From NCBI GenBank assembly GCA_900088475.1, contig FLMG01000761.1:64903-128902 (forward strand): 64,000 nt of DNA, given 5' to 3'. The notes below the pieces were generated by a model. That model did no database searches. It saw only the letters and a list, made by a program, of their open reading frames with translations, and was not told the DNA's origin. The position numbers were made by a program, and so were the translations under genes. The stretch's first letter is position 1, and each line of letters opens with the position of its first letter. Below, piece after piece: positions 38,801 through 59,864 of the stretch. The stretch comes from Hyphochytrium catenoides (Eukaryota > Protista > Hyphochytriomycota).

Positions 38801-40280
38801 GGGAGGAGGATAGATGGATAAGAATTGTTTAGGGGCAGCAAGAGAGAAAATATTGAGGTTAATGTGAGCCGGAGCCAGCGAGAGCGAGCTGAGGATAGAG
38901 AGAGGAGAAGAGAGGCACATATAGTATATAGTATGGTGCCAAACAAGTGAGAAGCAAATGCCTGGCAAGCTTTTGAAGCGTTTTGACCGAGGGCCTGGAC
39001 CAGGATAGCAAGAGGAGAGAGTGTATGGCCAAAGAGACTCATCAAGCTAGCCAACTCAATGACTCTCCTCTACCTGATCTCCTGAGTAGTTTTGCAAGAA
39101 TGTCCGCGATATCTTGACCTCTCCCATCGCCTGAGCGTAGCTCTTGGGGGAAGTTCTCATGATAAGCTTTGCAAAGAAATGCGCCACTTCAGGCTTTCCG
39201 AGCTCCTCCGCAGCCTTGAAAGAGACCTGGCCCAGCATCAGGTACCTGAACGGAGAGAAGAGTGAGAAACAAGAAGAAGAGACAGACCAAGGGAGTAAGA
39301 GGAGTAGAAGGACAAACAGAAGACAAGAACATGGAGATTAGTAGTCCACAAGCATTAGAAGGAGAGCTGAGAAGGGTATTCACCGAAACCAAGATGAATA
39401 GACAGAAGATGTGATGTGAGCTATGATAGCTGCACAATAACAGAGAGGGCCCTACCGAGAGAGAGAGAGAGAGAGAGAGAGATAAAGGGGAAGATGGGGG
39501 GCCGGGGCCAAAAGAAGAGAGAGGAGAAGCGAAGAGAGGCAGGAACGAGAGACGAGGGGACTGGATAGAGAGAAAGAGAGAGGAGGAGACAGGATAGAGA
39601 AAAAGAGAGAGAGAAAGCAGAGAGAGAAAGAGAGTGAGAAAGAGATAGAAAAAGAGAGAAAGCGAGAAGCGAGGGAGAAAGAGAGAGAAACCAGAAGAAT
39701 AGAGAAGACGAAAAGGGGATAGAAACAAGAGGTTGTTCCTCACCTCTCCACATTCTTCAACGGATTGTGCAGTCCACTCTTAGGAATACTCTTCATGGTC
39801 TCGATGAAAGGTCCAAGCTCTTCCTTACTCGTGAGCGGGACCTTCATGAAAGACTCGCCGTTCATCGGATCCACGATGTCCTCCATCGCCTTCGTCGTAG
39901 CCCATTTGCCATTCACTAGGAGAGAACATAGCAGGAAGGGCAGATGTAGACAGACACAGACAGAAAGAGCCAAAGAGAGAGATGAGACGCCAGTCAAACG
40001 GGAATGAGAAAGTATATCAAAGGCAAGTGCCCTCGGCGGAAGAAGCACAAGGTCGTCTCCGGCGCCTTCATAGCAAACACATAGCGATGGCAGAGAGCAG
40101 ATGGTGACGTGTACCTAGATTGTGCACGGTGGCTGGGTGGCGGTGGCTGATGCCTTCAGGATCTACCGTCGACCATTTGGGAAGCATGGTAGAGATGGCG
40201 CGACAGAGAGCCGGACGAGTCCCACATCGGCCTATGACTTGCCTCTTTCCGAGGAGGACGGTCCTGCTAGAGAGAATCAT
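35862..40280 (-). CDS. ALDH12A1: Delta-1-pyrroline-5-carboxylate dehydrogenase, ALDH12 (plant/protist type), mitochondrial
   Basis: PKSGLHNPLKNVER|YL, PKSYAQA, YRWPYGAVAVVTPFNFPLEIP, LFTG|S, catalytic Glu in EDAGFDWK and catalytic Cys in SGQKCSAQS, TTEIFGP, and NGTTYVGLRARTTGAPQNHW|FGPCGDPR. The N-terminus is an Arg-rich presequence. Confidence 0.95.
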
Positions 40281-40976
40281 CTCTCCCTCTATTCTCCGTT
40301 GATTCGCGGGCTAGAAGAGACGCAATGAGCTTCAAGTTGCAGATCTGATTGAGCTTTCGGCAGTCCACCAGCAGCAGCTCCTCTTTTGCATTGTGGGCTG
40401 CTGGACTGTGGGATGTGATGAGGTTGCTCTATTGCCATCAAAAGCAAAAAGATTCTCATCTCAGTCTTCTCTCTCTCTCTCNNNNNNNNNNNNNNNNNNN
40501 NNNNNNNNNNNNNNNNNNNNNNNNNNNNNNNNNNNNNNNNNNNNNNNTCTCTCTCTCTGTCTCTTTCTTCTCTCTATCTTTCTTTCTCTCTCTCTCTCTT
40601 TGTTTCTCCCTCTCTCTCTCTTTCTCTTCCTCTCTTTCTCTCTTCCTTGCTCTCTCTCTCTCTTTCTTCCTCTGTCTCACTCTGTTCCCATGTTGTCTTC
40701 CGCTGGTCTCCTCTCTTTGTCTCTCTGTCTCTGACTCTTTGCTTTGTCTCTCTGTGTCTCTCTCTCTGTCCTCCACTGTCTGTGTCTCTCCCCGTCTGCT
40801 TTTGCTCTGTCTCTTCCTCGCGTTGCCTCCTACTTCTCCCTCTCCATCTCTCCTCTGACTCTCAGTTGCGAGTCCGAATATCAGCTTTTCCCTATATTCT
40901 GGTTGACTCCGTGTCTCTCTACTCGCTCTGTCTCTCGCCGTTGTGTCCCCACTGTACTACAACTGCGAACATCAAG

Positions 40977-41225
40977 ATGGACCGCCCACCCACCCTTAAG
41001 CAGGCTATGACCTATGGAAAATTTACCAATGGTCCTCCTGGACCACCCATTCTCACTTCAAGCTCATCATTGAGAATGAATGATGCGAAATACCGTTACA
41101 AGCATGGCTATATTCAGGATAAGCAGTTATTTGGCTTCTACGTTGAAACAGTACTCTTATATTTTTACAGCCCCTCACTTACAAGGAAGGGAAGAAGAAA
41201 AAGGAAGAGGAGAAGAAGAAGATGA
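40977..41225 (+). pseudogene. Orphan short ORF or probable frameshifted pseudogene (MDRPPTLKQAMTYGKF...)
   Basis: The ATG sits in a caagATG context like other genes here. It is preceded by a CT-rich intron-like tract ending ctcag at 40865. Downstream, GA-rich sequence reads as charged low-complexity protein in shifting frames. No recognisable domain. Confidence 0.3.
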
Positions 41226-41802
41226 AGGAAAAGAAAAAGGAGGAGGAAGAGAAGAAGAAGAGAAGAAGAGACAGGGAAAGCTATAAAGCCTTGATCTCGT
41301 CCTCAGCTCGATCTGCTCAACGCTCATCATCAGTAAAGGAAGAATCATACTTGACTTCCGCAGTAGGTGGAGGAGGTGAAACACCAACAACATTGTCATC
41401 ACCATCGAGCTCGAGCGCGAGGCAAGCATTTTCAGGTTCCAGATGCTGAAGAGGAATACGCTTCAGAATCTTGAAGCGTACGTTCTTCATGAATAGCCAG
41501 AGAGACCGTGGTGTGAAGGCGTACAGCCATGGCCAAGCGGGACCGACCATTGACCAACATGCGAGAAGCATCAAGAGCAGAGCAGCCACACTGAAGCTTC
41601 GCCAGATATCCCAACCACAAAAACAACGACGCCCGGCATAGCTCCCCCAACACTCCCAAACTAGCGGGACAAGTTGCAGCCCTACAGCCTAATAAGGAAC
41701 CTCATACAGTCTATTACCTCTACCTCAAATCGTGGATGACAGACCAGAAAGCAGGTCCTACGCTGATGTTCATACAGCTTGGATGACAACATGACAACTC
41801 TG

Positions 41803-42095
41803 TCCCTTATTTATTCTAAAGAAAAGTATGTTCTATGCAGACGGGACGCGGACTTCACTGTGAGCTGCAAAAGGGCCACGTTTGTTTGATAATGGGAGGG
41901 GGGACACAGCTTTGGCTTCAGAATAGACTAAAGCTACAGAGATTATATCCCTTATTTATTCTATAGAAAAGTATGTTCTATGCAGACGGGACGCGGACTT
42001 CACTGTGAGCTGCAAAAGGGCCACGTTTGTTGATAATGGGAGATGGGGGACACAGCGTTGGCTTCAGAATAGACTACTAAAGCTACAGAGATTAT
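41803..42095. repeat. Direct tandem duplication, 2 copies of about 145 bp
   Basis: 41803-41946 and 41948-42095 both read tcccttatttattcta..gaaaagtatgttctatgcagacgggacgcggacttcactgtgagctgcaaaagggccacg...aagctacagagattat, differing by a few substitutions and small indels. Confidence 0.95.
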
Positions 42096-42219
42096 GGACA
42101 AAGACCAAGTGAGGTCAAGAGTCAAGAGGGCATAGAATTGTTCTACCGTCCAGAAAAAGGAAATACAGAGGCCTTGAAGAAGATGTTCAAGAAGTTCGGA
42201 GGATCATTTATAAGTCTCC

Positions 42220-42360
42220 GCCAATGTAAAGATTGACGGTACCGGTAGAAATGATCTGAGCGTAGTTTCAGCCGAACCTTAATCTTATCCGTATGATGAT
42301 TGGTTAAAGTGGACCAATCGCCTCCTAATAGTCTTATACCACATACGTAAGATAGCCAAT
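42220..42360. promoter_or_regulatory. Cluster of CCAAT boxes upstream of the New1-like gene
   Basis: CCAAT/ATTGG motifs occur near 42221, 42299, 42314 and 42356. Confidence 0.25.
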
Positions 42361-42719
42361 GACAATGGGGCGCTCTCCGAGACTTGCGAAACCTAAGCTT
42401 ATAAAGCTGTAAACTTTCTGGCCGCTACTGGATGAGATTCATCTACCTAAATTTCTAAATCATGGCAGTATTCTACATGTACTGCTCTCCAGACGGGAAT
42501 TCTCCTAGAAAGTATCTCTTTTATCCTTGATACCTATCTGAAAGACAACTTAGTCTCTAGGGACAGGGAATCAGGCGCAACGGCCATTGGATGTGGATGG
42601 AGATTCTGTCCTCTCTCTCACCCTCGCTCTGTCTCTCTCTCTTTTTCTCTTCGGAAAGGCTTTCCCTCCTCTATCCCTTTCTCTGTCTCTCAAAGCTTGT
42701 CTTGGGAGTACAACCTTGT

Positions 42720-42737
42720 CTCTCTCTTCTCTCCCCC

Positions 42738-42779
<42 letters not shown>

Positions 42780-42901
42780 CCTCTCTTTCTCCCTCTTCTC
42801 TCCCTCTCTCACTCCTTTTCTCTCTCTCTCTCTCACTTATTTCTCTATCTTTCTCTCACTTACTTTCTCTCTCTTTCTCCCACTTACTTTCTCTCTGTCT
42901 C

Positions 42902-42940
<39 letters not shown>
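42720..42940. repeat. (CT)n microsatellite field; similar tracts at ~25526, 31504, 40550, 50980, 52525, 60360, 61101 and 63396
   Basis: Long perfect and imperfect CT/GA dinucleotide runs are directly visible. Confidence 0.95.
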
Positions 42941-42943
<3 letters not shown>

Positions 42944-42994
42944 GCAACATTGCTTTCGCACCCTTGCAGACACCCCACATCTGTCTCTCTCTCC

Positions 42995-45900
42995 ATGGCC
43001 CTTCGGTGCCAACCATCGCAACTGTGCTCCCTCTTCTTTCCTGCCTCCTGTCTCTTCGGTGCTCCTTCAATTCTTCGCGTGCTCTCTCTCTCTTTCTTTC
43101 TCTCTCTTCAGGTCGCCGCGGGGCCGCGTCACATTCTCATTGGCGCAGGCATCTTCAGCACTGACACATTCCGGATCTCCGTCTTCAGGAAGAGAGATCA
43201 AAGAAGTAAAGACGCCCCAAGACGAAGAAGAAGGAGAAGACGTCCATTCAGAGCTCCGTTGTCTGCTACATAACTCTCTTCTCTCTCTTTCCCGTTCTCT
43301 GTCTTTCTCACCCCAGCGACGTCGTTGAGTTCTCCGAAGCCTTGGTTTAAGAGGAAAATGCCTCCGGACGGGAGCACCAATGACAGCGTTAGCACGCAGA
43401 CGGTAGACGAGCTGCTTGCCAAAGTGTTCAAAGCGGAGAGCTCCCAAGAATGTCTTGATACGGCCACAGCGCTGGCAGAAGAGGTCAAAGCTGTGGGCAT
43501 CCCCACGCTTCTTAAGCCAGACGCACAGCCTGTGATCCCTGCCATACAAAGAGCGCTTACGGACAAAAAGTCTGGCATAGCTAGAGAGAGCGGGCTACTC
43601 ATTATCGTCGCTCTGGCGCGGGTATGCGGCCGCGCTGCGTCTCCATTCCTCTTTCCGCTCTTCCTGGAAACAAGTTTAGAGCTGCATGCAGATAAGGGGA
43701 ATCCAGTCAGAGTGGCGGCTGGGATGGCAGCAGAGGCGCTTCTAGAGTTGCCTCATCCTCTCTCCTACCGGCGTTTCGTTCTTCCCTTTCTCTTCAAAGT
43801 ACTTGAGGATGCATCTCGCCGCTGGCAGTGCCGCGTGGCCGTCCTAGAGAGCCTTGAGCAGTGTGCAAAGCTCGCTCCAGAAGAGGTAGCAGAGTGTCTT
43901 CCTGTCATTATCCCTAAGATTAGCGACTGCATGCACACGACTAGGAAGGAGGTGAATGACGCCGCGATGCGCTGTATGACGGCTGTTGTCGGTGTTGTCG
44001 GGAACGATGATCTTCAGCCATATTTGCCCTCGATAGTGAAGTGTATGGAGCAGCCTTCAGGCATCCCAACGATGATCGAGAAGTTATCAGCCACCACGGT
44101 AAGCAGCATACGCAGCTCTCTTCCTCTCTCCTTCGAACCCTCGCCAGCCTACATTGTCTCCTTTTGGACTATGGACTGCCATGGCTATGAGTCATTTTTT
44201 CACCCTGTCTGTCTCCTTTATCACCATCCAGCTTCTGACATCCACTCCTGGGTAGGAACTCCCTTCTCTTACCTATCGAACTGTGACATAACTGCGTGGG
44301 GCTACCTCTCAACGTCATCACCCTCTGCTCCTTCATTCTGTTCCAAAGTTATACTGATGATTCTTTCCGCTGCATCTGCTTCTTACCCGCTGTAGTTCGT
44401 TGCTGAGGTGACTGGGCCTGCTCTGGCTCTGTTGGTTCCTCTGCTAGCGCGCGCTCTATCAGATCGCTCGCAGCTGACCCTAAGAAGGACATCAATTATC
44501 CTGAACAACCTATGCAAGCTTGTGAGAAACCCAGCCGTCGCTGGACAGTTTCTTCCGCAGCTTCTCTCGAAACTCACCGCGATCTGTGACTCTGCCACTT
44601 TTCCAGAGGTTAGAGATCTCGCGATGGAGGCGAGAAAGACATTGATCAGCGTTGGAGGAGAAGGAGTAGAATCTAAAGGGACCGGAGAGAAGCAGCATGA
44701 GATCCCTCTTTCTCTTCTCACTGAGGAAGAATGGAACAAGAAAGACCAAGAAATGATGAAGGTGCTAATGAAACATTTGGAAGGCAAAGAGATGTCCACT
44801 CCTCTGCATCAAACTTTGGAGCAGGTGAAGCTAGTCTGCGTGGAGATGGACGGGAAGAGAAGTTATGAGAAAAGCTACTGGTCGTCCGCACTCCATGAGT
44901 ATCTCTGGCCCTTTCTCTCCAAAGAGGAGCTTCAACAGCTATCCACCAAGCTTTCATCGCACTTTCTGACAGCCTACAGGGCCAGCATGCGAGGAGGAAG
45001 AGGATCTGAGGCTAATGAGGAGGAAGAGGGAGAAGAACTCTGTGATTGCTTCTTTTCTCTTGGCTATGGAGGAAGAATCCTCCTTAGTCATACCAACCTT
45101 AGGCTGCGAAGAGGTAGGACATATGGCCTTCTAGGAGCAAATGGAGCTGGAAAGACTACTCTGATGCGGGCCATTGCAGAGGGAAGAGTCGAAGGCTTTC
45201 CTCCTCCTACAGAGCTAAAGACCGTCTTTGTGGAGCATCGGTTACAAGGAGAGGAAGCTTCTCTCTCTCTTATTGACTTCCTCGCTGCAGACGAGAGTCT
45301 CAAGGGCGTCTCAAAGACAGAGATTCGCGACACTCTTATTTCTTCTGGCTTCACGGACGACTTAATAGGTAGAGAGGTTGGCTCTCTATCTGGAGGATGG
45401 AAGATGAAGCTTGAACTGTCTCGCGCCATGCTTCTTAATGCCGATATTCTTCTGTTGGATGAGCCAACGAATCACTTGGACGTGAACTCTGTCCAGTCCT
45501 TGATTGACTGGATCAAGTCACAAGAGACAAGGACCTGTCTCATTGTCTCTCACGACTCTGTCTTCCTAGATGCGGTCTGCACGGATATAATCCATTATGA
45601 AGAGAAGAAACTGGTGAATTACAGGGGCAATCTCACAGACTTTGCGAAAAAGAGGCCGGAGGCAAAGAGTTATTTCACTCTCTCCAATGAGCAAGTGAGG
45701 TTTGTCTTCCCTCCGCCAGGCTTTCTGACCGGTGTAAAGAGCAACACGAGAGCCATACTGAAGATGAAGAATGTGACCTTCACCTATCCTGGAAGAGAGA
45801 AGCCTTCTCTCATCAACGCCTCGGCAGTTCTCTCTCTGTCCAGTCGTGTTGGTATCATTGGAAAGAACGGCGCAGGTAAGCAGGGTCATGATTTTGTCAG

Positions 45901-47238
45901 AGGAGAAGATAAGAGAGAGAGAGAGAGAGAGAGAGACAAGAGAAGGAACAGAATGTGGGTTCTATCTACTTATCGGAATCTATGGGAAGATACAGAGACC
46001 GTGGATGGGGCTCATTTAGTCACCATGTACACTGACGCTTCCTGCTCTCTTTCTTTCCCCAACCCTTATATGATAGGCAAATCTACGATGATCAAGGTGC
46101 TTACGGGAGAAGTGACTCCTCAGACGGGGACGGTGTGGAAGCATCCGAACCTTCGCATTGGCTATGTTGCCCAGCACGCTTTCCACCACATCGACCAACA
46201 CTTGGAAGAGACCCCGGCCAGCTATCTACGATGGAGATACGCCCTTGGCTATGACAAGGAGGTCTTAGAAAAGGAGACGAGAGTGTTGACAGCTGAAGAG
46301 AGAGAGCAGATGGACAAGCCTATCATCATTGACCACCAAAAGAGACAAGTTGAGTCTCTGCTAGGAAGGCAGAAGCTAAAGAAGAGCTACAGGTATGAGG
46401 TCAAGTGGAGAGGCCTTTCCCATAAGTTCAACACTTGGATGAAGAGAGAAGAACTTCAAGAGCTGGGCTTCTCCAAGCTTATACAGCGCTTCGATGACAA
46501 TGAGAGCTCAAGAGAGGGGCTAGGGTACAGAGAGCTGACCATTGAGACCATACGAAAGCACTTCGAGGACGTGGGGCTAGAGGGAGAGATAGCCATGAAC
46601 AACAAGCTCTACTCTCTCTCAGGAGGACAGAAGGTAAAGGTCGTGATAGCGGCCGCAATGTGGAACAACCCGCACATGCTGGTTCTGGATGAGCCAANNN
46701 NNNNNNNNNNNNNNNNNNNNNNNNNNNNNNNNNNNNNNNNNNNNNNNNNNNNNNNNNNNNNNNNNNNNNNATGGGAAAGCGTACTTTGTCCCTCAGCCCT
46801 GCCGCTCTCCGTCATTTCTCTTGAGATTCTCTGGCTTCCCTTTTCTTTGGTGGCTGCTTATATTCCTGGATGTAGCAATTCTTTTATAAATGCAAGGAGC
46901 TCTTTGAATATCTCGGTATGCGGTATGCTAACTCGAGCTCACTATTGTCGTCAGGTGTCTGTGCCACTGCTGATGCAAACTTTGCTGACGACGGAGAGAG
47001 CAAGGCAGACGCTGCTGCGGGAGGAGGAGAGAACGGGGAAGCTGCCTCTTCGAAGGGGCCAACGGCGGACGAGCTGATTGAAGCAAAGGCTAAGGAGAAA
47101 AAGAAGAAGAAGAAGAAACTCTCTAGAAATGAACTGAAGGCCCAGGCCGTAAGGAGACAGCAGCGCACTTTGCGTTGGATTATTGCGGGCGGGAACACCG
47201 CGGGAGCCAAGAGAGAGTCGGACACTGAAAGCGACTAA
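42995..47238 (+). CDS. NEW1: eEF3-family ABC-F ATPase, New1/Elf1-like (HEAT - 4HB - ABC1 - ABC2 with chromodomain - basic tail); start uncertain (42995 via two small exons, or 43358); part of ABC2 lost in an N-gap
   Basis: SATT|FVAEVTGPALALLVPLL, FSLGYGGRILL, GANGAGKTT, LSGGWKMKL, LLDEPTNHLD, FPPPGFLTGVKSNTRAI, GKNGAG|KST, HPNLRIGY, chromodomain GRQKLKKSYRYEVKW, FDDNESSREGLGYREL, LSGGQKVKVVIAAAMWNNPHMLVLDEP and tail KKKKKKLSRNELK...DTESD. Confidence 0.9.
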
Positions 47239-47609
47239 TCTTCTAAGGCAGTCAGTCCTTGGCATGTTATAGAGTATGATAAGGGCGATGTGGGGCATGG
47301 GTAACAAGGAGAAGAGCTGAGTAGCGAACCATTAGAAGTGCGAGATCAGGAGAACCGGCTTCCCCAAGAAGCGTTGAAAAGATATTGAAAGATTTAACAT
47401 TAATTTAAAGGATAAAACAGAGTAAACAGCTAGAGCAATATGTTGAATGAGAGTGGCAGAAGCGAGAGAAGGGATAGAAGGTCAGATGAACAGCTTCCAG
47501 GACACTTTCTCCTTGTTGTCCTCTCTCTTTTCTCCGATGTAAAACTTCTCTTTCTCTCTCTTCTCCCTCTCTCTTTTCCTCTTCCTCTCGCTTCTCAATC
47601 AGTGACGAA

Positions 47610-50154
47610 TCAGTGACAGTGAAAGTCAAGCAGTGCCACTTGCTGGTACTTGACAGCAGAATATTTGCGCTGGACGGAGTCCTGCTTCTTATGCATCGAC
47701 GCTGGACGACTGTTTGATGGAAGCACCAACTCTTGGAGGTCTGCTATACAATTATCTAGATCCTTGAGCTGATAGCGGGAGCACTCCGCGAGCGCTGCGT
47801 CCTAGAAGTGTGGAAAAACTTGGTCAATACAGAGTTCGCCAGTAGACCTTGTGTCATTCTTTCACTTCTTTTTTCTCTCTTGGAGCACATCGCTTCCTCA
47901 GATATCCCGCAGGTAGTTCTCTGTCATCCTCTTCCCGTAACTCAACCTGATCCGAGTCATCTAGTGGGAGTCTTCTACCCTTGGCGCTTCTATGGTTCAC
48001 CACTTGTGAAGGCTCTGATCCCCCTGAATCACTCTATTGCTGCCCAGCTCGCTGCTCTCTTTTCCGGTCGCCTAGACTTACCCATGGCTCACTCTCTCCC
48101 AGGAGCTTTCTGGCGAGATAGGCGGACGAAGCAGCTAGTGCAGAGGGCAGATAGTCCATCATATGGCTCTCGATAAGCGTCATCTCGCAGAGGTAGTGTG
48201 CCAGAGCTCTGACCTTTTCTTCTCTCATCCCGTCCACTCCCCTGTTCTCCGAAAGAGAGACAGCGCGAAGGAAGCGGTTGAGAAAGTAAAGTGGCGAGGC
48301 AACAGTGACCTTGAAGTTCAAATTCTTCAGGATCTCCTCTTCCATGTCCAGAATGTTCTGGGCAGAGTAGGCTTTGTCCGTGATGTATACAAGGTCACTG
48401 AGCTCCGGCGGATAGATTTCTTCGTACTTTGAAGCAACCAGCAGAGCTGTGACTCCTACCAGTTGCAGCTGTTCTTGGGGCACTTCCACACGGGCGAGGA
48501 AGCGATCTATGAGGTTTACAGTGAGAAAGAGTGTCTCATCTTCCATCTTGAACTTTGAATGTACATCTATCAGCCAATCCACGAGGATGAGGCGCTTTCG
48601 AGGCGTGATCTCAGGTTGAAGATCCATATAAGCGGAGGAGAGACGTTCTCTAGTCTGTGGAGAGAGCAAGGCAAATGGGAAAATGAGCGAAGAGAATGAA
48701 AGGGAGGGACAGACCAAGAGAGAGACGTGTACACAATGGAAGCAATTACGTTGAGAGAGCTTGCGAAAGACGGCGAAAACGATGAGATGGCACGCAAGAA
48801 GCAGTTTTTAACCCTGGGGTAGAAGAGAGGAGGAGGATAAAGATGTCTGATGAAGTGTGCAAGCCGCAGCTGTGCCTTAGGAATAGCACCTTCCTCCATG
48901 TGAGAGCATGTGAGATAGGCCATAGCAGTTGTAAACGATATCGAAGACTTCTCGACTCATAAAAAGAGAGAGAGTGAGAGAGAGAAAAGGTCGAGAGGAT
49001 ATTGATAGAGAATGAGGACAGCGCCTCGTAGAGAGCAGGAGAAAGAAAGAGCAAGTGCTTCCTACCTCGAGCTCCCGATAGTTAGCGTCAATGTCGTCAA
49101 TGTACTCTGGGGCCATCAGAGGGTCATCATACATTACATCTCGTTGTATGTGTCTCTCTCTTCTGTGCTCACTTTCCCGCTCCTCCTCTTCCCACAAGGG
49201 GACTGGGCTTATGAGCATCGCATCCACAGCCTCAAAAGGAGAAGACTCTTCCTCTTGTACAAAGTCCTCTTCTTCCTCCTCTTTTGTGGGTATGGGATCC
49301 TCTAAGAGTCGAAGTATATCTCGATCTCTCTCGTCCAACCAGCTGGGAGCCTCGTCCTCGCTCTCTCTTCGTCTGCTCTCGTCTCTCACTCTGTCCATTT
49401 CGTTGATGTCTCTGCAGGTGCCCTGAAGATGGATGTTAACGGTCTTAGAGAGAGAAAGGAAGAAGATTGAGGCGTAGCAGGAAGGGCTGGACCAGAAACA
49501 AATGTTCTATGAACAGCTGAGAAAAGCTAGAGAAGGAGCCAGTGAGGAAACGGGGGAGGAGGAAATAATGCTTTAAGGGAAAGAGAGAAGGTGTTTTTCT
49601 TTCTTATCAACGAACGATTCACAAGAGATTGTACTAGAGACGACGATACAAAGGAGCAAGAAAAAAAAAGAAGAGGAAGAGAGAGAGAGAGAGAGTCGGG
49701 TTGAGCTAACGGTCAAGGAGAGTTAACAGGGAAGCAAAGTGTTTGCATGAGATAGAAGACAGATGTCTAACCTCTGAAAGCGGAGCCTTCGCATGTCTCT
49801 CTTGAGGTTGAGAGACAACATTTGTCATGTCGCCCAGGATATTCCTCTTAAACCCAGGTTTTCCATGCTGAGAGAAAGAGAGAGAGCCCTTCACGGTGTC
49901 TCCCTTTCTTTTCAATAAGCCCCCTCTCTCTTGCAGCTTAGTGCTCATAAGGCCGACATTGTGGTTCTCATCCTGAGGACCGGGGTCCTGATGCAATAGA
50001 GAAGACGTGAAGAAAGAGAGTCAGAAAAAAAGAGAGAGGAAGAGACAGAAAGGAAAGAGGTGCACGAGTGTATGAGAGGGTTAAATGAGAGAGCCAAAGA
50101 ACTTGGAGAGATTATCTCCCCCAGCAGCCTCCTTACCCGATAGACGAAGGCCAT
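47610..50154 (-). CDS. Mitotic cyclin (B/A-type), 5 coding exons
   Basis: D-box RNILGDMTN, DPLMAPEYIDDI, cyclin box RLILVDWLIDVHSKF...ETLFLTVNLIDRFL...LQLVGVTALLVASKYEEIYPP, and C-terminal VQRKYS..KY..VA. Confidence 0.93.
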
Positions 50155-50977
50155 AATGGACGGCTTTAGCTGCTGCCGGATGACAATGGAAGGTCCTTGG
50201 CAAGTGCGGGAGCCAGGAAGGAGAAACAATTGAGAGGGGAGACCGGACTGTGTGCTGTTTGTTGCCTGGTCGTCTGCTGCTCTTCAGCGCACACTCAGCA
50301 AGACAGAGAAGCTTTTTGAGAGTGATGCCCTCGTCCTCCGCTGATCTTTCTCTCTTGATGAAGCGTCGACCGCGCGTATATCAATCGGTTGAACTCCTGG
50401 CTTCGTTCTTGAGAGGAAGAGGACAAGTCTGGCGAAGAAGCGGCATCTCCCTCGCCACTGAGGTTAAATTCTCCCACGCTCTCTCCCTTTCTGTCTCATT
50501 CTTGGCGCAAAATCGCGGCAGTTTCTCTCCGCTCGTACTGGCAGAAGAGAGAGAGAGAGAGAGAGAGGGTGCAGATACCCTACGTACAGTTGGATCAGAC
50601 AAGCCATAAAAGTATTTTTTCACCGAGAGAGAGGGAGAGAGAGAGACAGAGAAAAAGAGAGAGAGAGAGACAGAGGTGGAGAGAGAATATTGACGACAGA
50701 GATGACAGCATGTCAGAGTGCAGGAGAGAAGAGAGATGAGGTGCAAAGGGGGCATAATGGAACAACGAACGGCAAAGCCAAAGGCAACAAGCAGAAGAGA
50801 GAGATGACCCAGAGAGACAGACATACACAGCCGCTCCAGATCCGAGCCAGAGGGGAGGAGGAGGGTAGGAAGACACGCCAAAGGACCGGCAGAGACGAGA
50901 GAGAGGGAGAGAGAGACTAAGAGCGAGAGCGAAAGAGACAAGCAGCGAGAGCGATGAATGGAGCGAGAGAGCAGAAT

Positions 50978-51014
<37 letters not shown>

Positions 51015-51279
51015 AAGAGAGAGAGAAAGGCAGAAAGAGAGAGAGAGAAAGAGAGCAGAGAGGCAAGAAGATCCACAGCTTCAGGTTTCCCGCGCTTTTC
51101 CCTCCGTCGGAGCTGTCCGCTGAAGAGCCCAACCTTTCTGATCGTTACCCATACATAAGCCGGATACCTACGGCTTATATACGTAAAACCAGTGGTCTGA
51201 GAAGACATCACCCAAACCTACGCCGCCCTTGAATCCCTTGCTGATCGCACTTGGGAGCTAGTGTAACGTCCAGACTGGT

Positions 51280-51300
51280 TTTGAATTTTGAGCCGTTAGA
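51280..51300 (-). promoter_or_regulatory. MSA/Myb (TCTAACGGCT) plus CHR (TTTGAA) elements upstream of the cyclin gene
   Basis: The plus strand reads TTTGAA at 51280-51285, then AGCCGTTAGA at 51291-51300 (reverse complement TCTAACGGCT). A palindromic TAACAGCTGTTA and a CTTGAA lie at about 51331-51354. Confidence 0.5.
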
Positions 51301-52134
51301 AAGAGGGCAGAGTCCGCAAAGCAAATGCTGTAACAGCTGTTAAAGGGCTTGAAAAGGCTTTTTCTCGCATTGAACGATGGCGGAGTTCTGATCTGGTACG
51401 ACTGCTTTAAGCTCCTGTAGCTCTGCCTTTAGCGTAGACTGTAAAGAGCAAATTTGGACGAAGGGTTACATTTCGCGTTTGATGGTCTTCTTGACCTTTT
51501 CACTACGAGCGCTCTGTCTGTCTGTCTGCCTGTGTTTTCCTATGTGTCTTTCTCTCTCTCTCTCTTTCTCTCCCTCTTTCTACTTTCTCTCTCTTTTTCT
51601 CTCTCCTTGCCGCTCGTTCTCTTTCTGTTTTCCCACTGCTTGATCTAACATCCTCCTCTCTTTCTCTCTCACTCTTTCTCTCTCTCCCTCTCGCTCTGTC
51701 TCTCTCTCTCTCAGCTCCCACGCTCTTGTTGAACTCTCCTTTCCTCTGCATACACTACTCTCTCTCACTGCTGGCTTTTCTCACTCTTCTTCCTCTCAGG
51801 GCACTCTTTCCTCATGTCTGTCATTCTCCATAGCAGTCTTGAATCCATCAGCTGCCTCAGTAGGACTCTAAGCCTCGCCCTTCACCACCCACGAAGCGAT
51901 CCGATAAGCTCTTGCTAGCCGGAGAGACCTTCTGAGGCAGACATTGAGGGCACAGACGGAGAGGCAAGAGAATCGTTACATCGCTAGAGAAGGGAAGTCA
52001 TCGGGCGCTGCATATCCTGACCGGGTTAGATAGACACTGACGGCGGTCAATGGCTCATCAGTAGCAGGTCCGAAGTGCTAAGCAACAGAAGAGGGCAACG
52101 CCTTCAGGAGGCTCAATAAATAGCGAATAAGAAG

Positions 52135-52521
52135 ATGAGTTCAGCCTTCACTCCTTTCGACTCCAGGTAGAGCGGTGGCTCCTAGCAGAGTCTCTTCTTT
52201 GTCCTCTTTCCTGGGCACTTCATCCTCAACTATTCTTTCCCCTCTTGTTTCCTTACATCTCCTCCTCTATATCTGCCCCTCGCTCACGCTCTGCGGCTGT
52301 GGCGTTTTTCTCTGTCATTGATATCTAGAACTTCCTCTTCTTTGATATCAAGCAGCCCCACGTGACTTAGCCCTATGTTCTCGCCTCTTTGGCTTAGAGA
52401 GTCTTTTGTCCGAGAATGGGAGAAGGTGAAACACGCCCAACACCAAGTAAGAATGGGATACAAGTCATAGACATAGAGATTGAACGATTGCGACAGAGGA
52501 CTGACGGAAGTGGGGCAGAAG

Positions 52522-52564
<43 letters not shown>

Positions 52565-53713
52565 GGAGCACAGAGAGAGAGAGCGAGAGAGAGAGAGAGA
52601 GAAGAGAAAGAAGAAGAAGAAGAGACAAGGGAGCTATCAGGAGGAGAAATGGGTCCGGAAACTTTGGGAGCTAACGGCTCTTGGCTTCTCTTCTCTGTGG
52701 AAGATTGAAGAGGAGAAGCTTGCTCTGACGAAGGGGTGGCGAAAGATAGAATTGACACATAAAAAGCTTCAAGATGAGCGAGCACGGTTGGCCTCTACTG
52801 TCCAAATCTTCTCGGTCCATCTGATATTCTGCTCTTTCTTCATGATGCTCTCCTGCTCGTATGTTACCTGCCTTTGTCTCTCTCGTCCCTTTGACTTCGT
52901 CTCGTTCCAGGTCTCTCCTCCCTCATCAAGGGATTCTTGTCCTTTGCTGCTAACTTTCTCTTTCTCTGTAGCTTTTGCTGCCAATCCACTCTCAATGTCT
53001 GCCTTTCTACAATGGACCTCGCTCGCGTTGTCCTCCCAGCATCTCTCACGACAGCCTTTGACATTCATCGCTATCTTTGTTTCAGCTTCGAAGACGAGGT
53101 TCAGAGAGAGTTGCACTTCCTTCCTCCTCATACAAAGGTTGAAATGAATGTGGGAGGACAGGTAGGCTCCTGGGACGCCTCCTCTCTTTTCTTGCTCTCT
53201 CAGTTCTCTATTCCTCTCTCCCTCTGCCTATGTGCCTCTATCACTCGCTCTCTCTCTCTGGACAGTGGACCTCACCTTTCCTCTTCACAGCTTCTACTTG
53301 CTGCAGTCTGCCTCCTTCCCTTCTGCTCGCCTTGTGCCTGAAGCTTAGAGCACGATTTGTCACAAGTCTCCCTTGGCACCCGAGAGGCTCCTTTTTAAAG
53401 CATCCTCTTCCTTCCTGTCGTCTTGCTGCCTATTCTCTCTCTTGAGGAACGGGATTCTTACTGAACTTGTTAGGTGTTTGTATCAACGGTCGACATTCTT
53501 TCTCGGGATCGCTTCTCTCTACTGGCTCTGCTCTGCACGGAGAATTGTCCCATCGAACGAGACTCAAGCTCCGGGTGCTACTTCTTTGACCGCGATTGGT
53601 AAGCACTATAGATCACTAGAGAGAATAGAGGATAACACCTTGGAGAGAGGAGAAGACCTACCCAAGCGGGAGCGACCCAGCAGAGACTAGAAACGAAGAA
53701 AGAAAGAAAAAAA

Positions 53714-53750
<37 letters not shown>

Positions 53751-54615
53751 CAAGAGGTATAGAGATGAGGGGGCATGCAGTAGGCCAGAAGTGGGTCCCA
53801 GCACGACCAACAAATGGCGAGCACCGCAATCAAAAAGAGTCAAGGAACAAGCAATAGAAGACAGAAACTGAGGCCGAATGCCGGAGAAGAAGAGAGAGAT
53901 GATCGAGAGGAGACTAGTCAAAGGGGCAAGACTGCTAAGCCCCTCTCCTCTCTCGCTCCAGGTACATTTTCCGTTACATTATGCAGTTCTTACAGGACAA
54001 GTCTCTGCCAGATTCAATGGAGACACTTAGAGAGCTGTACGGATCCGAACTCGGCGTCGTCTCTTATAACCTCTTTCCCGCTACTCCCACGACCAACTGA
54101 CTTTGGCTTCCTCGATTTTTCTCTCTTGGGTCTACTCTGTGTTCTTGTTAAGAAGGCTACAGTGACTCTTTCTTATGCACTGTGTGTCTTTCTATCTCCT
54201 CTCCCTCTGTCTCTCTTTTTTATCTCTTCTTCGTACTCCGTTTAGCCTAAGATATCGTCCACCAGGTACTTTGAAGCAAGCTTCTTTCGGATCGGGTTGC
54301 TGCGTCACGCCATAGAGAGACGGTAAGTGCGCCAGTACATTGAGGCCTCCATGTTACCGGTAGGAAAGAAAGAGAGAAGAGAGAGCTGAAGGGGCCGTCT
54401 TTCTCACGATGACGAGTGAAGTCTAGCCTTCTCACTCTATCCCTCGTCTTTATGTCAGTCTCTTGGACTTAGGCCAGGGAGAGCTTACGGACTTCAGTTA
54501 CTTCGATGACTTCACAAAGCGAGATGCTGCCTCTGTCAGGCCCGAGAAAGCGGTAGGAGGAAGTGGGAAGGGCAGCTCCGCTAAGGGAAAAGGCGAAGAG
54601 AGACTCAGTTGCTAA
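52135..54615 (+). CDS. Coiled-coil plus KCTD/T1-type BTB/POZ domain protein, about 8 exons
   Basis: Spliced exons give ...VEMNVGGQ|VFVSTVDILSRDRFSLLA...YFFDRDW|YIFRYIMQFL...ELYFEASFFRIGLLRHAIE, a typical KCTD-type BTB signature. The first and last exons are less certain. Confidence 0.8.
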
Positions 54616-55603
54616 TGATAATTTATTTATTATCTCGAGAATTTGTTGGTTCCCTCATCAGCTCAGTGGATAGAAAACGTACCTAGCTGCTCCCGTCTCC
54701 GCCCATCTTCTGCTCGGTTCCTTAGTCCCTAGCTCCTGCAGAAAATGTCTTGTTGCAGGCCGTCGACATTGCTGGCTATCCTGTCTCGCCGTGATCTGCG
54801 TTAAACCCATACATCAGGAGCCAAGTGACACCTGGCGTGTCATCGCAGTGTGCCCTTTCCTTCTCGCTGTCTCTCATGAGCAGCGCCTGGCTGAGGTTCA
54901 TGCAGCTGACGCTGTCGTTTCGTCCGCTTATTGACCTTTGTCCCATCCTCTGCAGCACTAACAGTGGAGAGAAGCTTTCTTAGTAGAAATAATGCAGTGT
55001 CTTCCTGCTCCTCCTCTTCCCTCAGGAGTGACAGAGCCTAAGCGGTGGCCGAAAAGTCTTGCCCAGTCGATCAACCGCTTCAAATAGCCGCTAACCGAAT
55101 ACTATTCAAGGCGTTTTGACCGTTAGCAGGCGTTTGTCAATACGTTAACGGCTATGGAGGTGGATACGGCCCGGAAGATGGGATGAGAATCTTTTTCTCT
55201 CTCGATTGTTGAGGTTGGCCGAGCTCTTTCTTCTCTCCTCTCTCTTTCACGTCTTCTTCCTCTTATCAGTTCTCTCTTTCTTCTCTCTCCTGGATGAGTG
55301 TTTGACACTCCTCCTTCTCTTCCCTTGCTCATGCGCTTCGTCTCCCTCTTGCTCTTGCTCTCTTTCTCTCCGCTTGATGTTGCTCTCTCCTCCTCTCCTG
55401 TCAGATTGTCAGGAGCTTGTTTCCTAAACCTTCCACCTCGGCAAACCTAGCATCCGCGTTCTTGTCCCGTGACAACACGACCAGGAAAACAGGCGCTTCT
55501 CTCGCAGTGAGGCCTTCCTAACTCATTCCTCTCTTTCTGTGTGCACGTTACTCTGAAGTTAGTAGCAGCTTTTCTCTCATTCGCTTGCTATCTGGACACC
55601 GTC

Positions 55604-58600: not shown

Positions 58601-58736
58601 AGGACTTCAATCCTCTTCGAGGTCAGGAGAGGTGCTAGTCAACCTCCAGAAAGACGGCAGAGTCTTTATCTCAGGGCCTACCGTAAAGGCGTTGGAAGCG
58701 ACAATGCCCATCACGCCCAAGTTCTACGTGAGCTAG
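55604..58736 (+). CDS. Fusion of an AANAT/PAA1-like GNAT acetyltransferase and a PhzF/PBLD-family isomerase, 7 exons
   Basis: GNAT part: LERAAFPADEAAS, LCVHSVVV...QRQGIA, LIPFYVNCGF, VHG|KDPWYE. It splices in frame via KIYQ|VDSFTD into the PhzF part: FKGNPAAV, EMNLSETAY, LRWFTP|AAEVALCGHATLA and SRYFAPQVGVEEDPVTGSAHC. Confidence 0.88.
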
Positions 58737-59864
58737 GAGAGAGACAGCACACAGCGGGCATCCAATATGGAAAGAAAGAGAGACTAGAAGAGAAAGAGAG
58801 AGAGATAATCGATAAGAGGAGTAGGGAAGAAATGGAAAGAGAAGGAAAGGGGAAACGAGCTAAGACAAGAAGGAGGAAAGAGAGAGAGAGAAGAAGGGAG
58901 AAACGGCTGCACTCGGGAAGGCAACAAAGGGAGATTCGAAAAATCTAGCGGAGTACATGTGGTTCGCGCTTTTATATAAATAGGTTCACACTTTTTGCAA
59001 TAGATAACACTCTTTTTGCCCCATAAGTAACTGCTATAGAGCTGATGGCTTTCCTTTCCCTGTCGGGCCTTAAATGAAAGCCATGGGAAAGAGAGTGAGC
59101 TAATAGAAGATACTGGGGTAGGAGAGATGCCGAACTAGGGTGACGGTGTGCTTCCGTTTGTGCAGAGAGTGGACGCTCACAGGTGCGTGAATGAGATGAC
59201 GACTGACAGATGGTAGGGACACAAGCCCCAGGCCAACCCTAGCACCTGATGATGCAGATCCGCGAGGGAGACACTGAGAAAGAGCTAGATACCGCCATCA
59301 CTCACCTCTTTGAGCGGGGACTAGTTCCTCTTCCGTCTTCTCGTTCTCTTTGGGGCGAGCTTGCTTGCGTGCAGCCTAACTCCACACCTCTTTGGATAGA
59401 GAGGTGTTTCTAGATCTAGCACTACCGGACGGACAATGCCCGTGAATAGCCAGAGATGAAATTAGAAAGCTGCCGAACATCCTCTAGCGAGACCTCCCAC
59501 CGACGTCTTTTAGTACGTTTGAACGTGTTTAGAAAGAAAGAAGCTGGTTCTACTAGCTGCTACTTCGAAGTCCACCTCCTTTCGGCAGCAGAAGACGGGA
59601 CTATCAAATGTCAACGCCGATAGACGATAGTAAACAACAGACAAAAGAAAGATAAGGAAAGGTGGCCTTCCCGTCAGAGTGCTTTGCTGGTGGTGGTGCA
59701 ACACGTAAAGTTCCTCTGTTGAGCAATTGCTAATAACCTACTCCCAGCAAGTTTATTAACAGAGAGGATGAAGTACGTACTCCGGAGTAGGTTCCTTATG
59801 ACAAGGTTGACGCCTCGGCTGAAGTTAGGGTTATTTAGTCAACAATGAACTTTGGGTCTATGAC

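What the first reader, a model, noticed from the sequence alone, without database searches (positions are those of the whole stretch)
42995..47238. Fungal-type New1/Elf1 ribosomal ABC-F ATPase in a non-fungal genome: horizontal transfer candidate
Seen: a full eEF3-family architecture including the chromodomain insert. As recalled, its diagnostic motifs fit the New1/Elf1 paralogue rather than canonical eEF3. These are FPPPG.LTGVKSNTRAI (eEF3 has FPEPG.LEGVKTKQKAI), HPNLRIGY, GRQK.KKS..YEVKW, FDD.E.SREGLGYREL, AMWNNPH.LVLDEP and a tail KKKKL.RNELK...RR....W. Known: New1 is regarded as largely fungal and assists termination/recycling, whereas protist homologues are usually eEF3-like. The flanking genes (ALDH12, CYFIP, plant-type PreP) are not typical of Dikarya. 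The gene has host-style introns with CT/GA tracts, which argues against contamination, but only about 5 introns versus about 18-20 in similarly sized neighbours. Inference: a naturalised fungus-derived translation factor, or an unrecognised wider New1 distribution.
Basis: partly seen in the sequence, partly recalled or inferred. Interest (0 to 1): 0.75.

Follow-up and report, generated by a model that had tools for sequence, protein, structure and literature searches.

The report
Fungal-type New1 factor in a pseudofungus
A water-mould-like microbe that is not a fungus carries a working-looking copy of New1, a ribosome helper protein so far recorded only in fungi, most likely taken from a fungus by gene transfer; such transfers are rarely reported for core protein-synthesis genes.

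Summary
Window 43358-47238 (+) encodes an eEF3-family ABC-F ATPase: HEAT, four-helix bundle, ABC1, ABC2 with chromodomain, basic tail. Three introns are visible. The N gap hides about 45-50 residues of ABC2, and read contigs continue in frame into it from both sides.

Each exon scores higher against a New1 profile than against eEF3 profiles. In a careful ML tree the protein sits inside the core fungal New1/Elf1 clade (100/100).

The host is almost certainly the stramenopile Hyphochytrium catenoides (4759 contigs; HSP90 84-85% identical to oomycetes). It also has an intronless eEF3-type gene that groups with oomycete eEF3, so that copy looks vertically inherited. A duplication within stramenopiles is rejected (AU p 9e-55).

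A position outside all named fungal New1-side sequences is rejected (p 6e-5). A sister position to the core fungal clade is not (p 0.21), so the donor is unresolved.

Allelic SNPs (28 synonymous, 8 non-synonymous) indicate purifying selection. The last exon is contiguous with host genes.

Best reading: one fungus-to-pseudofungus transfer of New1 (about 0.72). Ancient paralogy with many losses remains possible.

The scan flagged this same stretch twice; no other DNA was involved. Expression and function are untested.

The parts
43358..44098 (+). Exon 1, 247 codons, phase 0 end: N-terminus and HEAT repeats. No Q/N prion-like region.
   Evidence: First ATG of the open frame. Pfam HEAT_EF3_N 1.9e-33. 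Scores 219 bits against the New1 profile and 174-179 against eEF3 profiles.
44099..44395 (+). Intron 1, GT..AG, 297 nt, CT-rich
   Evidence: GTAAGC donor and CTGTAG acceptor. The junction restores ..KLSATT|FVAEVTGP.., which is continuous with all homologues. None of the four fungal New1 genes examined has an intron here.
44396..45875 (+). Exon 2, ending in phase 1: last HEAT repeats, four-helix bundle, ABC1 (Walker A GANGAGKT, signature LSGGWKMKL, Walker B LLLDEPTNHLD, H-loop VSHD), the FPPPGFLTGVKSNTRAIL motif, and the start of ABC2
   Evidence: Pfam. PDB: New1 6s47 450.7 bits, eEF3 404 bits. AlphaFold model with helices 110-200. Foldseek. New1 profile 672 bits against 604-608 for eEF3 profiles.
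45876..46076 (+). Intron 2, GT..AG, 201 nt, in frame and without a stop. It splits the Gly codon of the ABC2 Walker A (GKNGAG|KST), phase 1.
   Evidence: The New1 gene of the chytrid Phlyctochytrium bullatum has an intron at the same position and phase.
46077..46697 (+). Exon 3: ABC2 with the chromodomain insert, signature LSGGQKVKV, Walker B LVLDEP. The exon runs on into the gap.
   Evidence: Pfam ABC_tran 1.3e-15 and Chromo 5.5e-13. New1 profile 396 bits against 323-334 for eEF3 profiles. Read contigs continue as TNFIDRDSLG in frame.
46698..46770 (.). Assembly gap of 73 N. It hides the rest of ABC2 (D-loop to H-loop), of which about 31 residues remain unread, plus the donor site of the last intron. 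The true length is about 165-175 nt if it holds no further intron.
   Evidence: Loose ends of contigs in runs X1 and X2 on both sides. Length estimated against the alignment consensus.
46771..46954 (+). 3' part of the last intron, with the AG acceptor at 46953-46954
   Evidence: No coding frame matches ABC2 here. The donor AAAG|GTAATGGG spans the gap edge. The phase-1 join restores ..THK-G-VCATADA...
46955..47238 (+). Last exon: acidic/Gly linker, polybasic tract KEKKKKKKKLSRNELKAQAVRRQQRTLRW, stop TAA at 47236-47238
   Evidence: It matches the New1 profile (40 bits, E 2.9e-14) and none of the three eEF3 profiles at E <= 10. It lies in the N-free block 46771-64000 together with the cyclin B gene at 48037-48717 (-).
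40548..43357 (.). Upstream CT/GA-microsatellite-rich region between the divergently oriented P5CDH-like gene and this gene. It is the presumed promoter and 5' UTR.
   Evidence: Only low-complexity ORFs. N-free up to the gene body. No transcript data were available.

Best explanation
Window 43358-47238 (+) is an intact, host-integrated gene for a New1/Elf1-type ABC-F ribosomal ATPase. The genome is very probably that of the stramenopile pseudofungus Hyphochytrium catenoides. The gene was most likely acquired once by horizontal transfer from a fungus. The donor lay at or near the base of the core New1 radiation, and chytrid proteins are the most similar today, at about 60% identity. The gene then gained host-type introns and now coexists with the host's vertically inherited, intronless eEF3.

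How it most likely works is inferred from yeast New1 and not shown here. The HEAT domain binds the head of the small ribosomal subunit. ABC2 and the chromodomain bind 5S rRNA and uL5 and reach towards the E site and L1 stalk. ATP binding and hydrolysis at the two composite sites cycle the factor on and off 80S ribosomes. There it helps termination and recycling at stop codons that follow certain Lys or Arg codons. It may also partly back up eEF3.
For: Shown here:
- Architecture and fold match eEF3/New1.
- Catalytic motifs are present wherever the sequence is read.
- Every exon scores better against a New1 profile than against eEF3 profiles: 219 vs 174, 672 vs 608, 396 vs 334, and 40 vs no hit.
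- Of 7 strictly diagnostic columns, 5 show the New1 state and 0 the eEF3 state. The host's other gene shows the eEF3 state in 9 of 9.
- The nearest solved chain is New1.
- The best 120 matches among 5.8 billion proteins are all named fungi or unnamed, with chytrids first.
- In the careful ML tree (LG+C20+F+G4) the protein is inside the core fungal New1 clade at 100/100 on a branch of 0.36. The 87-row tree gives the same clade at SH-aLRT 100.
- AU tests reject a clade of this protein with stramenopile eEF3 (delta lnL 130, p 9e-55). They also reject a position outside all named fungal New1-side sequences (delta lnL 72, p 6e-5).
- The host is a stramenopile. Its eEF3-type gene L002 groups with oomycete eEF3 (98/93).
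- Integration: even depth, diploid SNPs, and a New1-type last exon contiguous with host genes.
- Purifying selection: 28 synonymous and 8 non-synonymous allelic differences, pN/pS about 0.09.

From the literature:
- New1 is recorded only from fungi (PMC6723617).
- Sixteen fungi-to-Pseudofungi transfers are documented, 6.5 of them from chytrids (PMC13345962).
- New1 binds the ribosome as eEF3 does and acts at termination (PMC7145556, PMC11514491).
Against: - A sister position to the core fungal New1 clade is not rejected (delta lnL 10, p 0.21). The placement inside the clade changes with sampling: with chytrids at 93, with Basidiomycota at 88/87, sister to 131 fungal sequences at 0.70.
- The terminal branch is long (0.91). 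The distance to chytrid New1 (about 1.5) is no smaller than the distance from the host eEF3 to chytrid eEF3 (about 1.3-1.4). Distances alone therefore do not indicate a recent transfer.
- The two fungal sequences that make the gene look nested (Sorochytrium, Nowakowskiella) are long-branched, and I chose that test after seeing the tree.
- The two intron positions shared among fungal New1 genes are absent here.
- No orthologue from a second hyphochytrid was found.
- No RNA evidence was available.
- About 31 residues of ABC2, including the H-loop, are unread.
- The function is inferred only by homology.
Confidence: 0.72

Rival explanations
1. Ancient paralogy with vertical descent. The eEF3/New1 duplication predates the split of stramenopiles and opisthokonts. 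New1 survived only in fungi and in the hyphochytrid lineage and was lost everywhere else.
For: - A sister position of the gene to the core fungal New1 clade is not rejected (p 0.21), and it is the topology of the densely sampled FastTree.
- The distance to fungal New1 is as large as that between the vertically inherited eEF3 copies.
- The backbone joining New1 to the eEF3 groups is poorly resolved (82-93), so the time of the duplication is open.
- The conserved fungal introns are not shared.
Against: - It needs New1 to be lost independently in oomycetes, ochrophytes, green and streptophyte algae, holozoans, aphelids and every other sampled group that keeps eEF3-family genes.
- A position outside all named fungal New1-side sequences is rejected (p 6e-5).
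- In the 87-row tree New1 lies on the opisthokont side of a branch (SH-aLRT 94) that separates it from all stramenopile, algal and other protist sequences.
- Stramenopiles have their own second paralogue, a divergent eEF3L, which is unrelated to New1.
Confidence: 0.17
2. Contamination or mis-scaffolding. The 6.1-kb N-bounded block 40548-46697 comes from a fungus in the culture and was wrongly scaffolded into a host contig.
For: The gene body lies between two N gaps. It has far longer exons than its neighbours.
Against: - The last exon is New1-type and lies in the same N-free sequence as host genes.
- Read contigs continue in frame into the gap from both sides.
- Depth is the same as in the flanks, and two-allele SNPs run through the gene as in the diploid host (PMC5795050).
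- Introns and upstream sequence carry the host's CT/GA tracts.
- GC3 is like that of host genes.
- No known fungus is more than about 60% identical.
- The published assembly passed several contamination screens.
Confidence: 0.03
3. Convergence or long-branch artefact. The gene is a fast-evolving stramenopile eEF3 or eEF3L copy that only resembles New1.
For: The terminal branch is long (0.91). H. catenoides lacks the oomycete-type eEF3L, so a diverged orthologue could be imagined.
Against: - A clade with stramenopile eEF3 costs 130 log-likelihood units (p 9e-55).
- In the tree that includes oomycete and ochrophyte eEF3L, the gene is still in the New1 clade at 100.
- New1-state residues are spread over all four exons, under a site-heterogeneous model that resists long-branch attraction.
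Confidence: 0.03
4. The transfer went through a giant virus rather than directly from a fungal cell. This is a variant of the best explanation, not an alternative to transfer.
For: The H. catenoides assembly carries nucleocytoplasmic large DNA virus insertions, with fungal-like genes beside them (PMC5795050). eEF3-like genes occur in Chlorella and Phaeocystis viruses (PMC6723617).
Against: No viral gene was noticed in the window. The known viral copies are eEF3L, not New1. No viral sequence fell in the New1 clade. This was not tested further.
Confidence: 0.05

Closest known systems
New1 (S. cerevisiae) / Elf1 (S. pombe), the fungal ABC-F paralogue of eEF3
   Same: - Same domain order: HEAT, 4HB, ABC1, ABC2 with chromodomain, polybasic tail.
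- New1-state motifs: FPPPG.LTGVKSNTRAI, GRQKLKKS, EASREG.GYREL, DIA..N.
- Best PDB match is 6s47.
- Inside the New1 clade at 100/100.
- No Q/N region, as in all New1 outside the Saccharomycetales.
   Different: - The host is a stramenopile, whereas New1 is recorded only from fungi (PMC6723617).
- At most about 60% identical to any known New1, on a long branch.
- The four-helix-bundle region (exon 2 residues 95-203) did not align to yeast New1 by sequence, although it folds as four helices.
- The gene structure is its own.
- The function is untested.
eEF3 of fungi and of non-fungal eukaryotes, such as Phytophthora infestans eEF3 (PMC5754060)
   Same: Same architecture and ribosome-binding parts. 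The same genome holds a true eEF3-type gene (G000 contig C1768, 1061 aa) that groups with oomycete eEF3.
   Different: - The window gene lacks the eEF3-state residues (FPEPG.LEG.KSKDKA, EF.THS.IRG).
- It scores 45-65 bits per exon lower against eEF3 profiles.
- A clade with stramenopile eEF3 is rejected (p 9e-55).
eEF3L, the divergent eEF3-like group of algae and protists (Murina et al. 2019), including a second oomycete paralogue (cluster of P0291, Globisporangium polare)
   Same: A non-fungal carrier of an eEF3-family protein. It is the second family member beside eEF3 in a stramenopile.
   Different: The window gene is not in that clade. H. catenoides has no orthologue of the oomycete eEF3L.
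Documented fungus-to-Pseudofungi gene transfers (Richards et al. 2011; PMC13345962)
   Same: Same direction and the same ecological pairing of osmotrophs. Chytrids are named among the donors.
   Different: The documented cases are mostly secreted enzymes, transporters and metabolic genes. This is a ribosome-binding translation factor. It is not mentioned in the text or the held supplements of the 2026 screen.

Membership tests
eEF3/New1/eEF3L group of ABC-F ATPases | Domain order: N-terminal HEAT, four-helix bundle, ABC1, ABC2 with a chromodomain insert, basic C-terminal extension. No Arm subdomain. | tested here: met
   Pfam by exon. AlphaFold model with four helices at 110-200 followed by ABC1. 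Foldseek's best matches are eEF3 and New1 over about 493 columns. Polybasic tail in the last exon. About 31 residues of ABC2 are unread.
eEF3/New1/eEF3L group of ABC-F ATPases | Two ATPase sites with complete catalytic motifs: Walker A, signature LSGG, Walker B with catalytic Glu, H-loop | tested here: inconclusive
   ABC1 is complete: GANGAGKT, LSGGWKMKL, LLLDEPTNHLD, VSHD. ABC2 has GKNGAGKST, LSGGQKVKV, LVLDEPTNFIDRDSLG. The ABC2 H-loop lies in the unread gap.
New1/Elf1 subfamily | Placement inside the clade that holds ascomycete and basidiomycete New1/Elf1, apart from eEF3 | tested here: met
   100/100 in the careful tree and SH-aLRT 100 in the 87-row tree. The clade is anchored by Xylaria 'prion formation protein 1', basidiomycete NEW1/elf1, and PDB scoring of chytrid members (New1 975 bits, eEF3 792 bits). 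True S. cerevisiae and S. pombe sequences were not in the tree.
New1/Elf1 subfamily | New1-state residues at columns that separate New1 from eEF3 | tested here: met
   Five of 7 strict diagnostic columns show the New1 state and 0 the eEF3 state. Motif blocks agree. Every exon prefers the New1 profile.
New1/Elf1 subfamily | Chromodomain shorter than in yeast eEF3, lacking the beta4-beta5 hairpin (PMC7145556) | tested here: met
   The gene has the short form. So do chytrid, aphelid, holozoan, algal and stramenopile eEF3. The feature is met but does not discriminate outside Dikarya.
New1/Elf1 subfamily | Restricted to fungi (PMC6723617) | tested here: not met
   The host is a stramenopile. This is a statement about distribution, not a structural criterion. 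It is the point of the finding.
New1/Elf1 subfamily | Function: binds 80S ribosomes like eEF3 and relieves stalling at stop codons after particular Lys/Arg codons. Loss causes cold sensitivity. | not testable with these tools
   Known for S. cerevisiae only (PMC7145556, PMC11514491). It needs genetics, ribosome profiling or complementation.
Canonical eEF3 | eEF3-state motifs and placement with eEF3 of the same lineage | tested here: not met
   Zero of 7 diagnostic columns show the eEF3 state. A clade with stramenopile eEF3 is rejected. The host's other gene, L002, meets both criteria.

The most novel reading that the evidence does not exclude
Paralogue displacement in the translation machinery. 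The hyphochytrid lineage lost the second eEF3-family protein that other stramenopiles keep (eEF3L) and took over a fungal New1. That factor now works on a stramenopile ribosome beside the native eEF3. An informational, ribosome-binding factor would then have crossed between eukaryotic supergroups and been functionally integrated, possibly carried by a giant virus.
Probability: 0.2. Interest if true: 0.75.

Novelty: new member of a known kind. Interest (0 to 1): 0.58.

Why it matters
New1 is treated as a fungus-only factor, and eEF3-family proteins are discussed as antifungal targets because animals lack them. A New1 outside fungi would be the first recorded, to my knowledge and in the library searched.

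It would add a ribosome-binding translation factor to the list of fungus-to-pseudofungus transfers, which is otherwise dominated by secreted enzymes, transporters and metabolic genes. It also bears on the expectation, from general knowledge, that genes of the translation machinery seldom transfer.

It offers a natural experiment. A New1 that has long worked on a non-fungal ribosome beside a non-fungal eEF3 can show which contacts and which termination contexts are essential to New1 function. It also gives a way to date the eEF3/New1 duplication.

The finding rests on one gene in one species, so its reach is limited until a second hyphochytrid is sampled.

Tried and rejected
1. Searches used exons by reference. 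Searches and trees also used window:44396-46696, which reads through the in-frame, stop-free intron 2. Its 67 extra residues drop out on alignment trimming. Exon 1 and the last exon were judged only by profile scores.

2. An exact look-up of the host's eEF3-type protein found nothing. The host's proteins are not in the collection, so host identity had to be inferred.

3. No RNA run holds the gene. Run X4, guessed to be RNA from another organism label, gave only three short pieces, one of them from another ABC-F gene. I draw no conclusion on expression.

4. Pinning the donor failed. The placement within the New1 clade changes with sampling.

5. Intron sharing was tried as proof of transfer of genomic DNA. 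One of three positions is shared with one chytrid. It is a CAG|G site where parallel gain is plausible, and the conserved fungal introns are absent. This is inconclusive.

6. The truncated chromodomain was tried as a New1 marker. It does not discriminate.

7. The atlas search with the neighbouring cyclin exon gave only generic cyclin clusters and no host taxonomy.

8. Looking up contigs for the unnamed relatives P0247, P0253, P0121 and P0394 gave run or sample accessions but no organism names.

9. The 2026 HGT screen's text and two held supplement files do not mention eEF3, New1 or ABCF. One file was cut when stored, so absence is not shown.


Full report
**What is in the sequence**

The + strand of window 43358-47238 carries one gene.
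- Exon 1, 43358-44098, starts at the first ATG of the open frame.
- Intron 1 is 44099-44395 (GT..AG).
- Exon 2, 44396-45875, ends in phase 1.
- Intron 2 is 45876-46076. It is 201 nt, in frame and free of stops.
- Exon 3 starts at 46077 and runs into the N gap at 46698-46770.
- The last exon, 46955-47238, ends in TAA.

Pfam finds HEAT_EF3_N in exon 1, HEAT_EF3_GNC1 and ABC_tran in exon 2, and ABC_tran with a Chromo insert in exon 3. An AlphaFold model of exon 2, built on 43 aligned sequences, has mean pLDDT 83. It shows HEAT helices, then four helices at residues 110-200 (the four-helix bundle), then ABC1. Foldseek's best matches are yeast eEF3 and New1 over the whole length. The last exon carries the polybasic tail. 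There is no Q/N-rich N-terminus.

That stretch is CT-rich low complexity.

**The assembly gap, tested first**

Contigs of two DNA runs of the same organism label were laid on 43300-47300.
- They run on from 46697 with letters that read, in frame, (DEP)TNFIDRDSLG.
- They run into 46771 with letters that read EDGEVTHK, then G|GTA. This is a phase-1 donor that fits the acceptor at 46954 and gives ..THK-G-VCATADA...

Both sides are therefore in frame with what an ABC2 domain needs. Against the family alignment, about 31 residues remain unread, including the H-loop. The true gap is about 165-175 nt rather than 73, unless it holds another intron.

Depth is even across the gene and its flanks, and two-allele differences run through it.

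**Which paralogue it is**

The nearest solved chain to exon 2 is yeast New1 (6s47, 450.7 bits) ahead of eEF3 (404 bits). I built profiles from 27 core fungal New1 proteins and from eEF3-type proteins. Every exon prefers New1:

| Exon | New1 profile (bits) | eEF3 profiles (bits) |
|---|---|---|
| 1 | 219 | 174-179 |
| 2 | 672 | 604-608 |
| 3 | 396 | 323-334 |
| last | 40 | no match at E <= 10 |

Seven of the columns that strictly separate the two groups are covered by the window protein. It has the New1 state in five, neither state in two, and the eEF3 state in none.

One published New1 feature is a chromodomain without the beta4-beta5 hairpin (PMC7145556). It is present here, but all non-Dikarya eEF3 in the alignment share it, so it does not discriminate.

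**Who the host is**

The window's assembly has 61.0 Mb in 4759 contigs. The published Hyphochytrium catenoides assembly has 4758 scaffolds plus a mitochondrial genome. It was sequenced on GAIIx and HiSeq and is diploid, with SNPs at a frequency of about 0.0275 (PMC5795050). The runs that hold the stretch date from 2011 and 2017 and show two alleles.

The intronless cytosolic HSP90 of the assembly is 84-85% identical to oomycete HSP90 and 79% to ochrophyte HSP90. I conclude that the host is very probably H. catenoides. It is in any case a stramenopile close to oomycetes and not a fungus. This is an inference; no tool named the organism.

**A second family member in the same genome**

A six-frame search of the assembly finds only two eEF3-family genes. 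The second, L002 on contig C1768, is an intronless 1061-residue ORF.
- It has eEF3-state motifs (FPEPGYLEGIKSKDKA).
- It prefers eEF3 over New1 in the PDB (897 vs 857 bits).
- It shows the eEF3 state in 9 of 9 diagnostic columns.
- Its relatives include chytrids, aphelids, a holozoan, streptophyte and green algae and oomycetes, all at 52-58% identity. Two unnamed transcripts are 76-77% identical.

Oomycetes also have a divergent eEF3L (cluster of P0291). The assembly has no orthologue of it.

**Phylogeny**

The best 120 matches of the window protein among 5.8 billion proteins are all fungal where named, with chytrids first. An exhaustive HMMER search of 1.84 billion cluster representatives gave no relative above 54-57% identity.

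I built three trees:
- a FastTree of 148 rows;
- an IQ-TREE quick tree of 87 rows;
- a careful IQ-TREE of 52 rows by 1049 columns (LG+C20+F+G4 by PMSF, 1000 ultrafast bootstraps plus SH-aLRT).

In the two IQ-TREE trees the window protein lies in the clade of core fungal New1. That clade holds Ascomycota, Basidiomycota, Mucoromycota, Mortierellomycota, Basidiobolus and Chytridiomycota. Support is 100 (SH-aLRT) and 100/100, on a branch of 0.36. L002 groups with its two close relatives and then with oomycete eEF3 (98/93).

The clade names are anchored by PDB scoring:

| Protein | New1 (bits) | eEF3 (bits) |
|---|---|---|
| chytrid 'A' P0009 | 975 | 792 |
| chytrid 'B' P0123 | 887 | 970 |
| Sorochytrium P0249 | 698 | 662 |
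| Nowakowskiella P0251 | 747 | 644 |

Inside the New1 clade the position is unstable.
- With chytrids, at 93, in the 87-row tree.
- With Basidiomycota, at 88/87, in the 52-row tree.
- Sister to 131 fungal sequences, at 0.70, in a 142-row FastTree.

No unnamed sequence is a specific sister to it.

**Tests of alternatives (AU)**

| Constraint | delta lnL | p | Result |
|---|---|---|---|
| Window protein plus stramenopile eEF3 as one clade | 130 | 9e-55 | rejected |
| All 29 named fungal New1-side rows as one clade without the window protein | 72 | 6e-5 | rejected |
| The 27 core fungal New1 as one clade without it | 10 | 0.21 | not rejected |

So the gene is New1 and is not a stramenopile duplicate. 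It is closer to core fungal New1 than a blastoclad and a divergent chytrid New1 are. Whether it is nested among the core fungal phyla or just outside them is open.

Two cautions apply. The second test was chosen after I saw the tree, and it leans on two long-branched rows.

**Is it a live, integrated gene?**

N-free blocks run 40548-46697 and 46771-64000. The gene body therefore sits between two gaps. The last exon is New1-type by profile, and it is contiguous with the cyclin B gene at 48037-48717 (-) and everything downstream.

GC3 of the exons (0.53-0.65) is like that of host genes (0.49-0.67). The introns are GT..AG and of the genome's typical length. The first is 297 nt and the second 201 nt; the published mean is 208 nt.

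Of 36 listed allelic differences in the coding sequence, 28 are synonymous and 8 are not. That gives pN/pS of about 0.09. Fifteen further differences were not listed by the tool. This indicates purifying selection. No RNA data could be reached.

**Introns as a trace of origin**

I mapped exons of four fungal New1 genes.
- Three of them share an intron near residue 187: Batrachochytrium, Phlyctochytrium and Umbelopsis.
- Two have an intron within a few residues of each other at the end of the ABC2 Walker B, near LDE|PTN (residue 919 in P0006, about 926-928 in P0015); I did not align the flanks.
- The window gene has neither.

Its intron 2 splits the Gly codon of the ABC2 Walker A in phase 1. 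The Phlyctochytrium bullatum gene has an intron at exactly this site and phase. The site is CAG|G, where independent gain is plausible. I count this as a lead, not evidence.

**Reading**

Transfer of New1 from a fungus into the hyphochytrid lineage explains the following:
- the clade membership;
- the absence of New1 from every other named non-fungal group that keeps eEF3-family genes;
- the separate, vertical history of the host's eEF3;
- host-type introns and composition.

It fits a documented route: 16 fungi-to-Pseudofungi transfers, 6.5 of them from chytrids (PMC13345962).

The main rival is ancient paralogy with many losses. It is kept alive by three observations:
- the test that did not reject a sister position;
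- the long branch (0.91);
- a distance to chytrid New1 (about 1.5) that is no smaller than the distance from host eEF3 to chytrid eEF3 (about 1.3-1.4).

So the transfer, if real, is old or was followed by faster change. Contamination and convergence are unlikely, for the reasons above.

**How it should work (inferred)**

In yeast, New1 binds the 80S ribosome as eEF3 does.
- The HEAT domain sits on the small-subunit head (ES9, uS13, uS19).
- ABC2 and the chromodomain sit on 5S rRNA and uL5 and point into the E site.
- Loss of New1 causes stalling at stop codons after particular Lys/Arg codons, depending on the P-site tRNA.
- Overexpression rescues loss of eEF3 (PMC7145556, PMC11514491).

The window protein keeps all these parts and, wherever it is read, the ATPase motifs. 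The same cycle is the most likely mechanism. None of this was tested here.

**Known or new**

Murina et al. (PMC6723617) list New1 from fungi only (3 phyla, 127 species) and eEF3L from algae, chytrids and choanoflagellates. No paper in the library holds both Hyphochytrium and eEF3 or New1. The 2026 transfer screen does not mention it in its text or the held supplements.

I therefore rate it a new member of a known family in an unexpected host. The scan flagged the same stretch twice.

Noticed in passing
G000 contig C1768 (locus L002:138-3323): This is the host's second eEF3-family gene. It is an intronless 1061-residue eEF3-type ORF that fills a 3.5-kb contig, with GC 55% against 49% in the window. 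It groups with oomycete eEF3. Two unnamed transcripts (P0121, P0122) are 76-77% identical and may come from other hyphochytrids.
   Followed up: yes
window 45876-46076: Intron 2 is 201 nt, in frame and free of stops. Retaining it would insert 67 residues into the ABC2 Walker A. Its position and phase match an intron of the Phlyctochytrium bullatum New1 gene (L014, after residue 711 of P0006).
   Followed up: partly
P0291 cluster (Globisporangium polare, 1144-1150 aa); own genome: Oomycetes carry a divergent eEF3-like paralogue beside eEF3. It groups with ochrophyte eEF3L (Florenciella). The window's genome has no orthologue; its best match is its own eEF3 at 43% identity.
   Followed up: partly
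window 46698-46770: The N run of 73 understates the gap. From the family alignment and the read contigs it should be about 165-175 nt.
   Followed up: yes
window 40548-43357 and the introns of the gene: Dense CT/GA microsatellites fill the divergent intergenic region between the P5CDH-like gene (- strand, exons near 39740-40048) and this gene. They recur in its introns. All four N gaps of the window (31540, 36512, 40482, 46698) may sit at such tracts.
   Followed up: no
L012 (ENA metagenome scaffold, protein P0253): This is a very long-branched eEF3/New1-like protein from a compact, apparently intron-poor eukaryotic scaffold. It sits next to NHL-repeat kinases and NDC10_II/GCR1_C genes. Its place in the tree is unstable (with Sorochytrium, or with Syssomonas).
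   Followed up: partly
alignment of the chromodomain region: The beta4-beta5 hairpin that distinguishes yeast eEF3 from New1 has no counterpart in the chytrid, Mortierella, Basidiobolus, aphelid, holozoan, algal and stramenopile eEF3 examined: these and New1 align there without a length difference. No Dikarya eEF3 was in that alignment, so where the hairpin arose was not tested.
   Followed up: partly
window 20567-22605 (+) and 48037-48717 (-): Neighbouring genes identified in passing: a WRNIP1/MgsA-type AAA+ ATPase (AAA, AAA_assoc_2, MgsA_C) and a B-type cyclin (Cyclin_N 3.6e-45, Cyclin_C).
   Followed up: no
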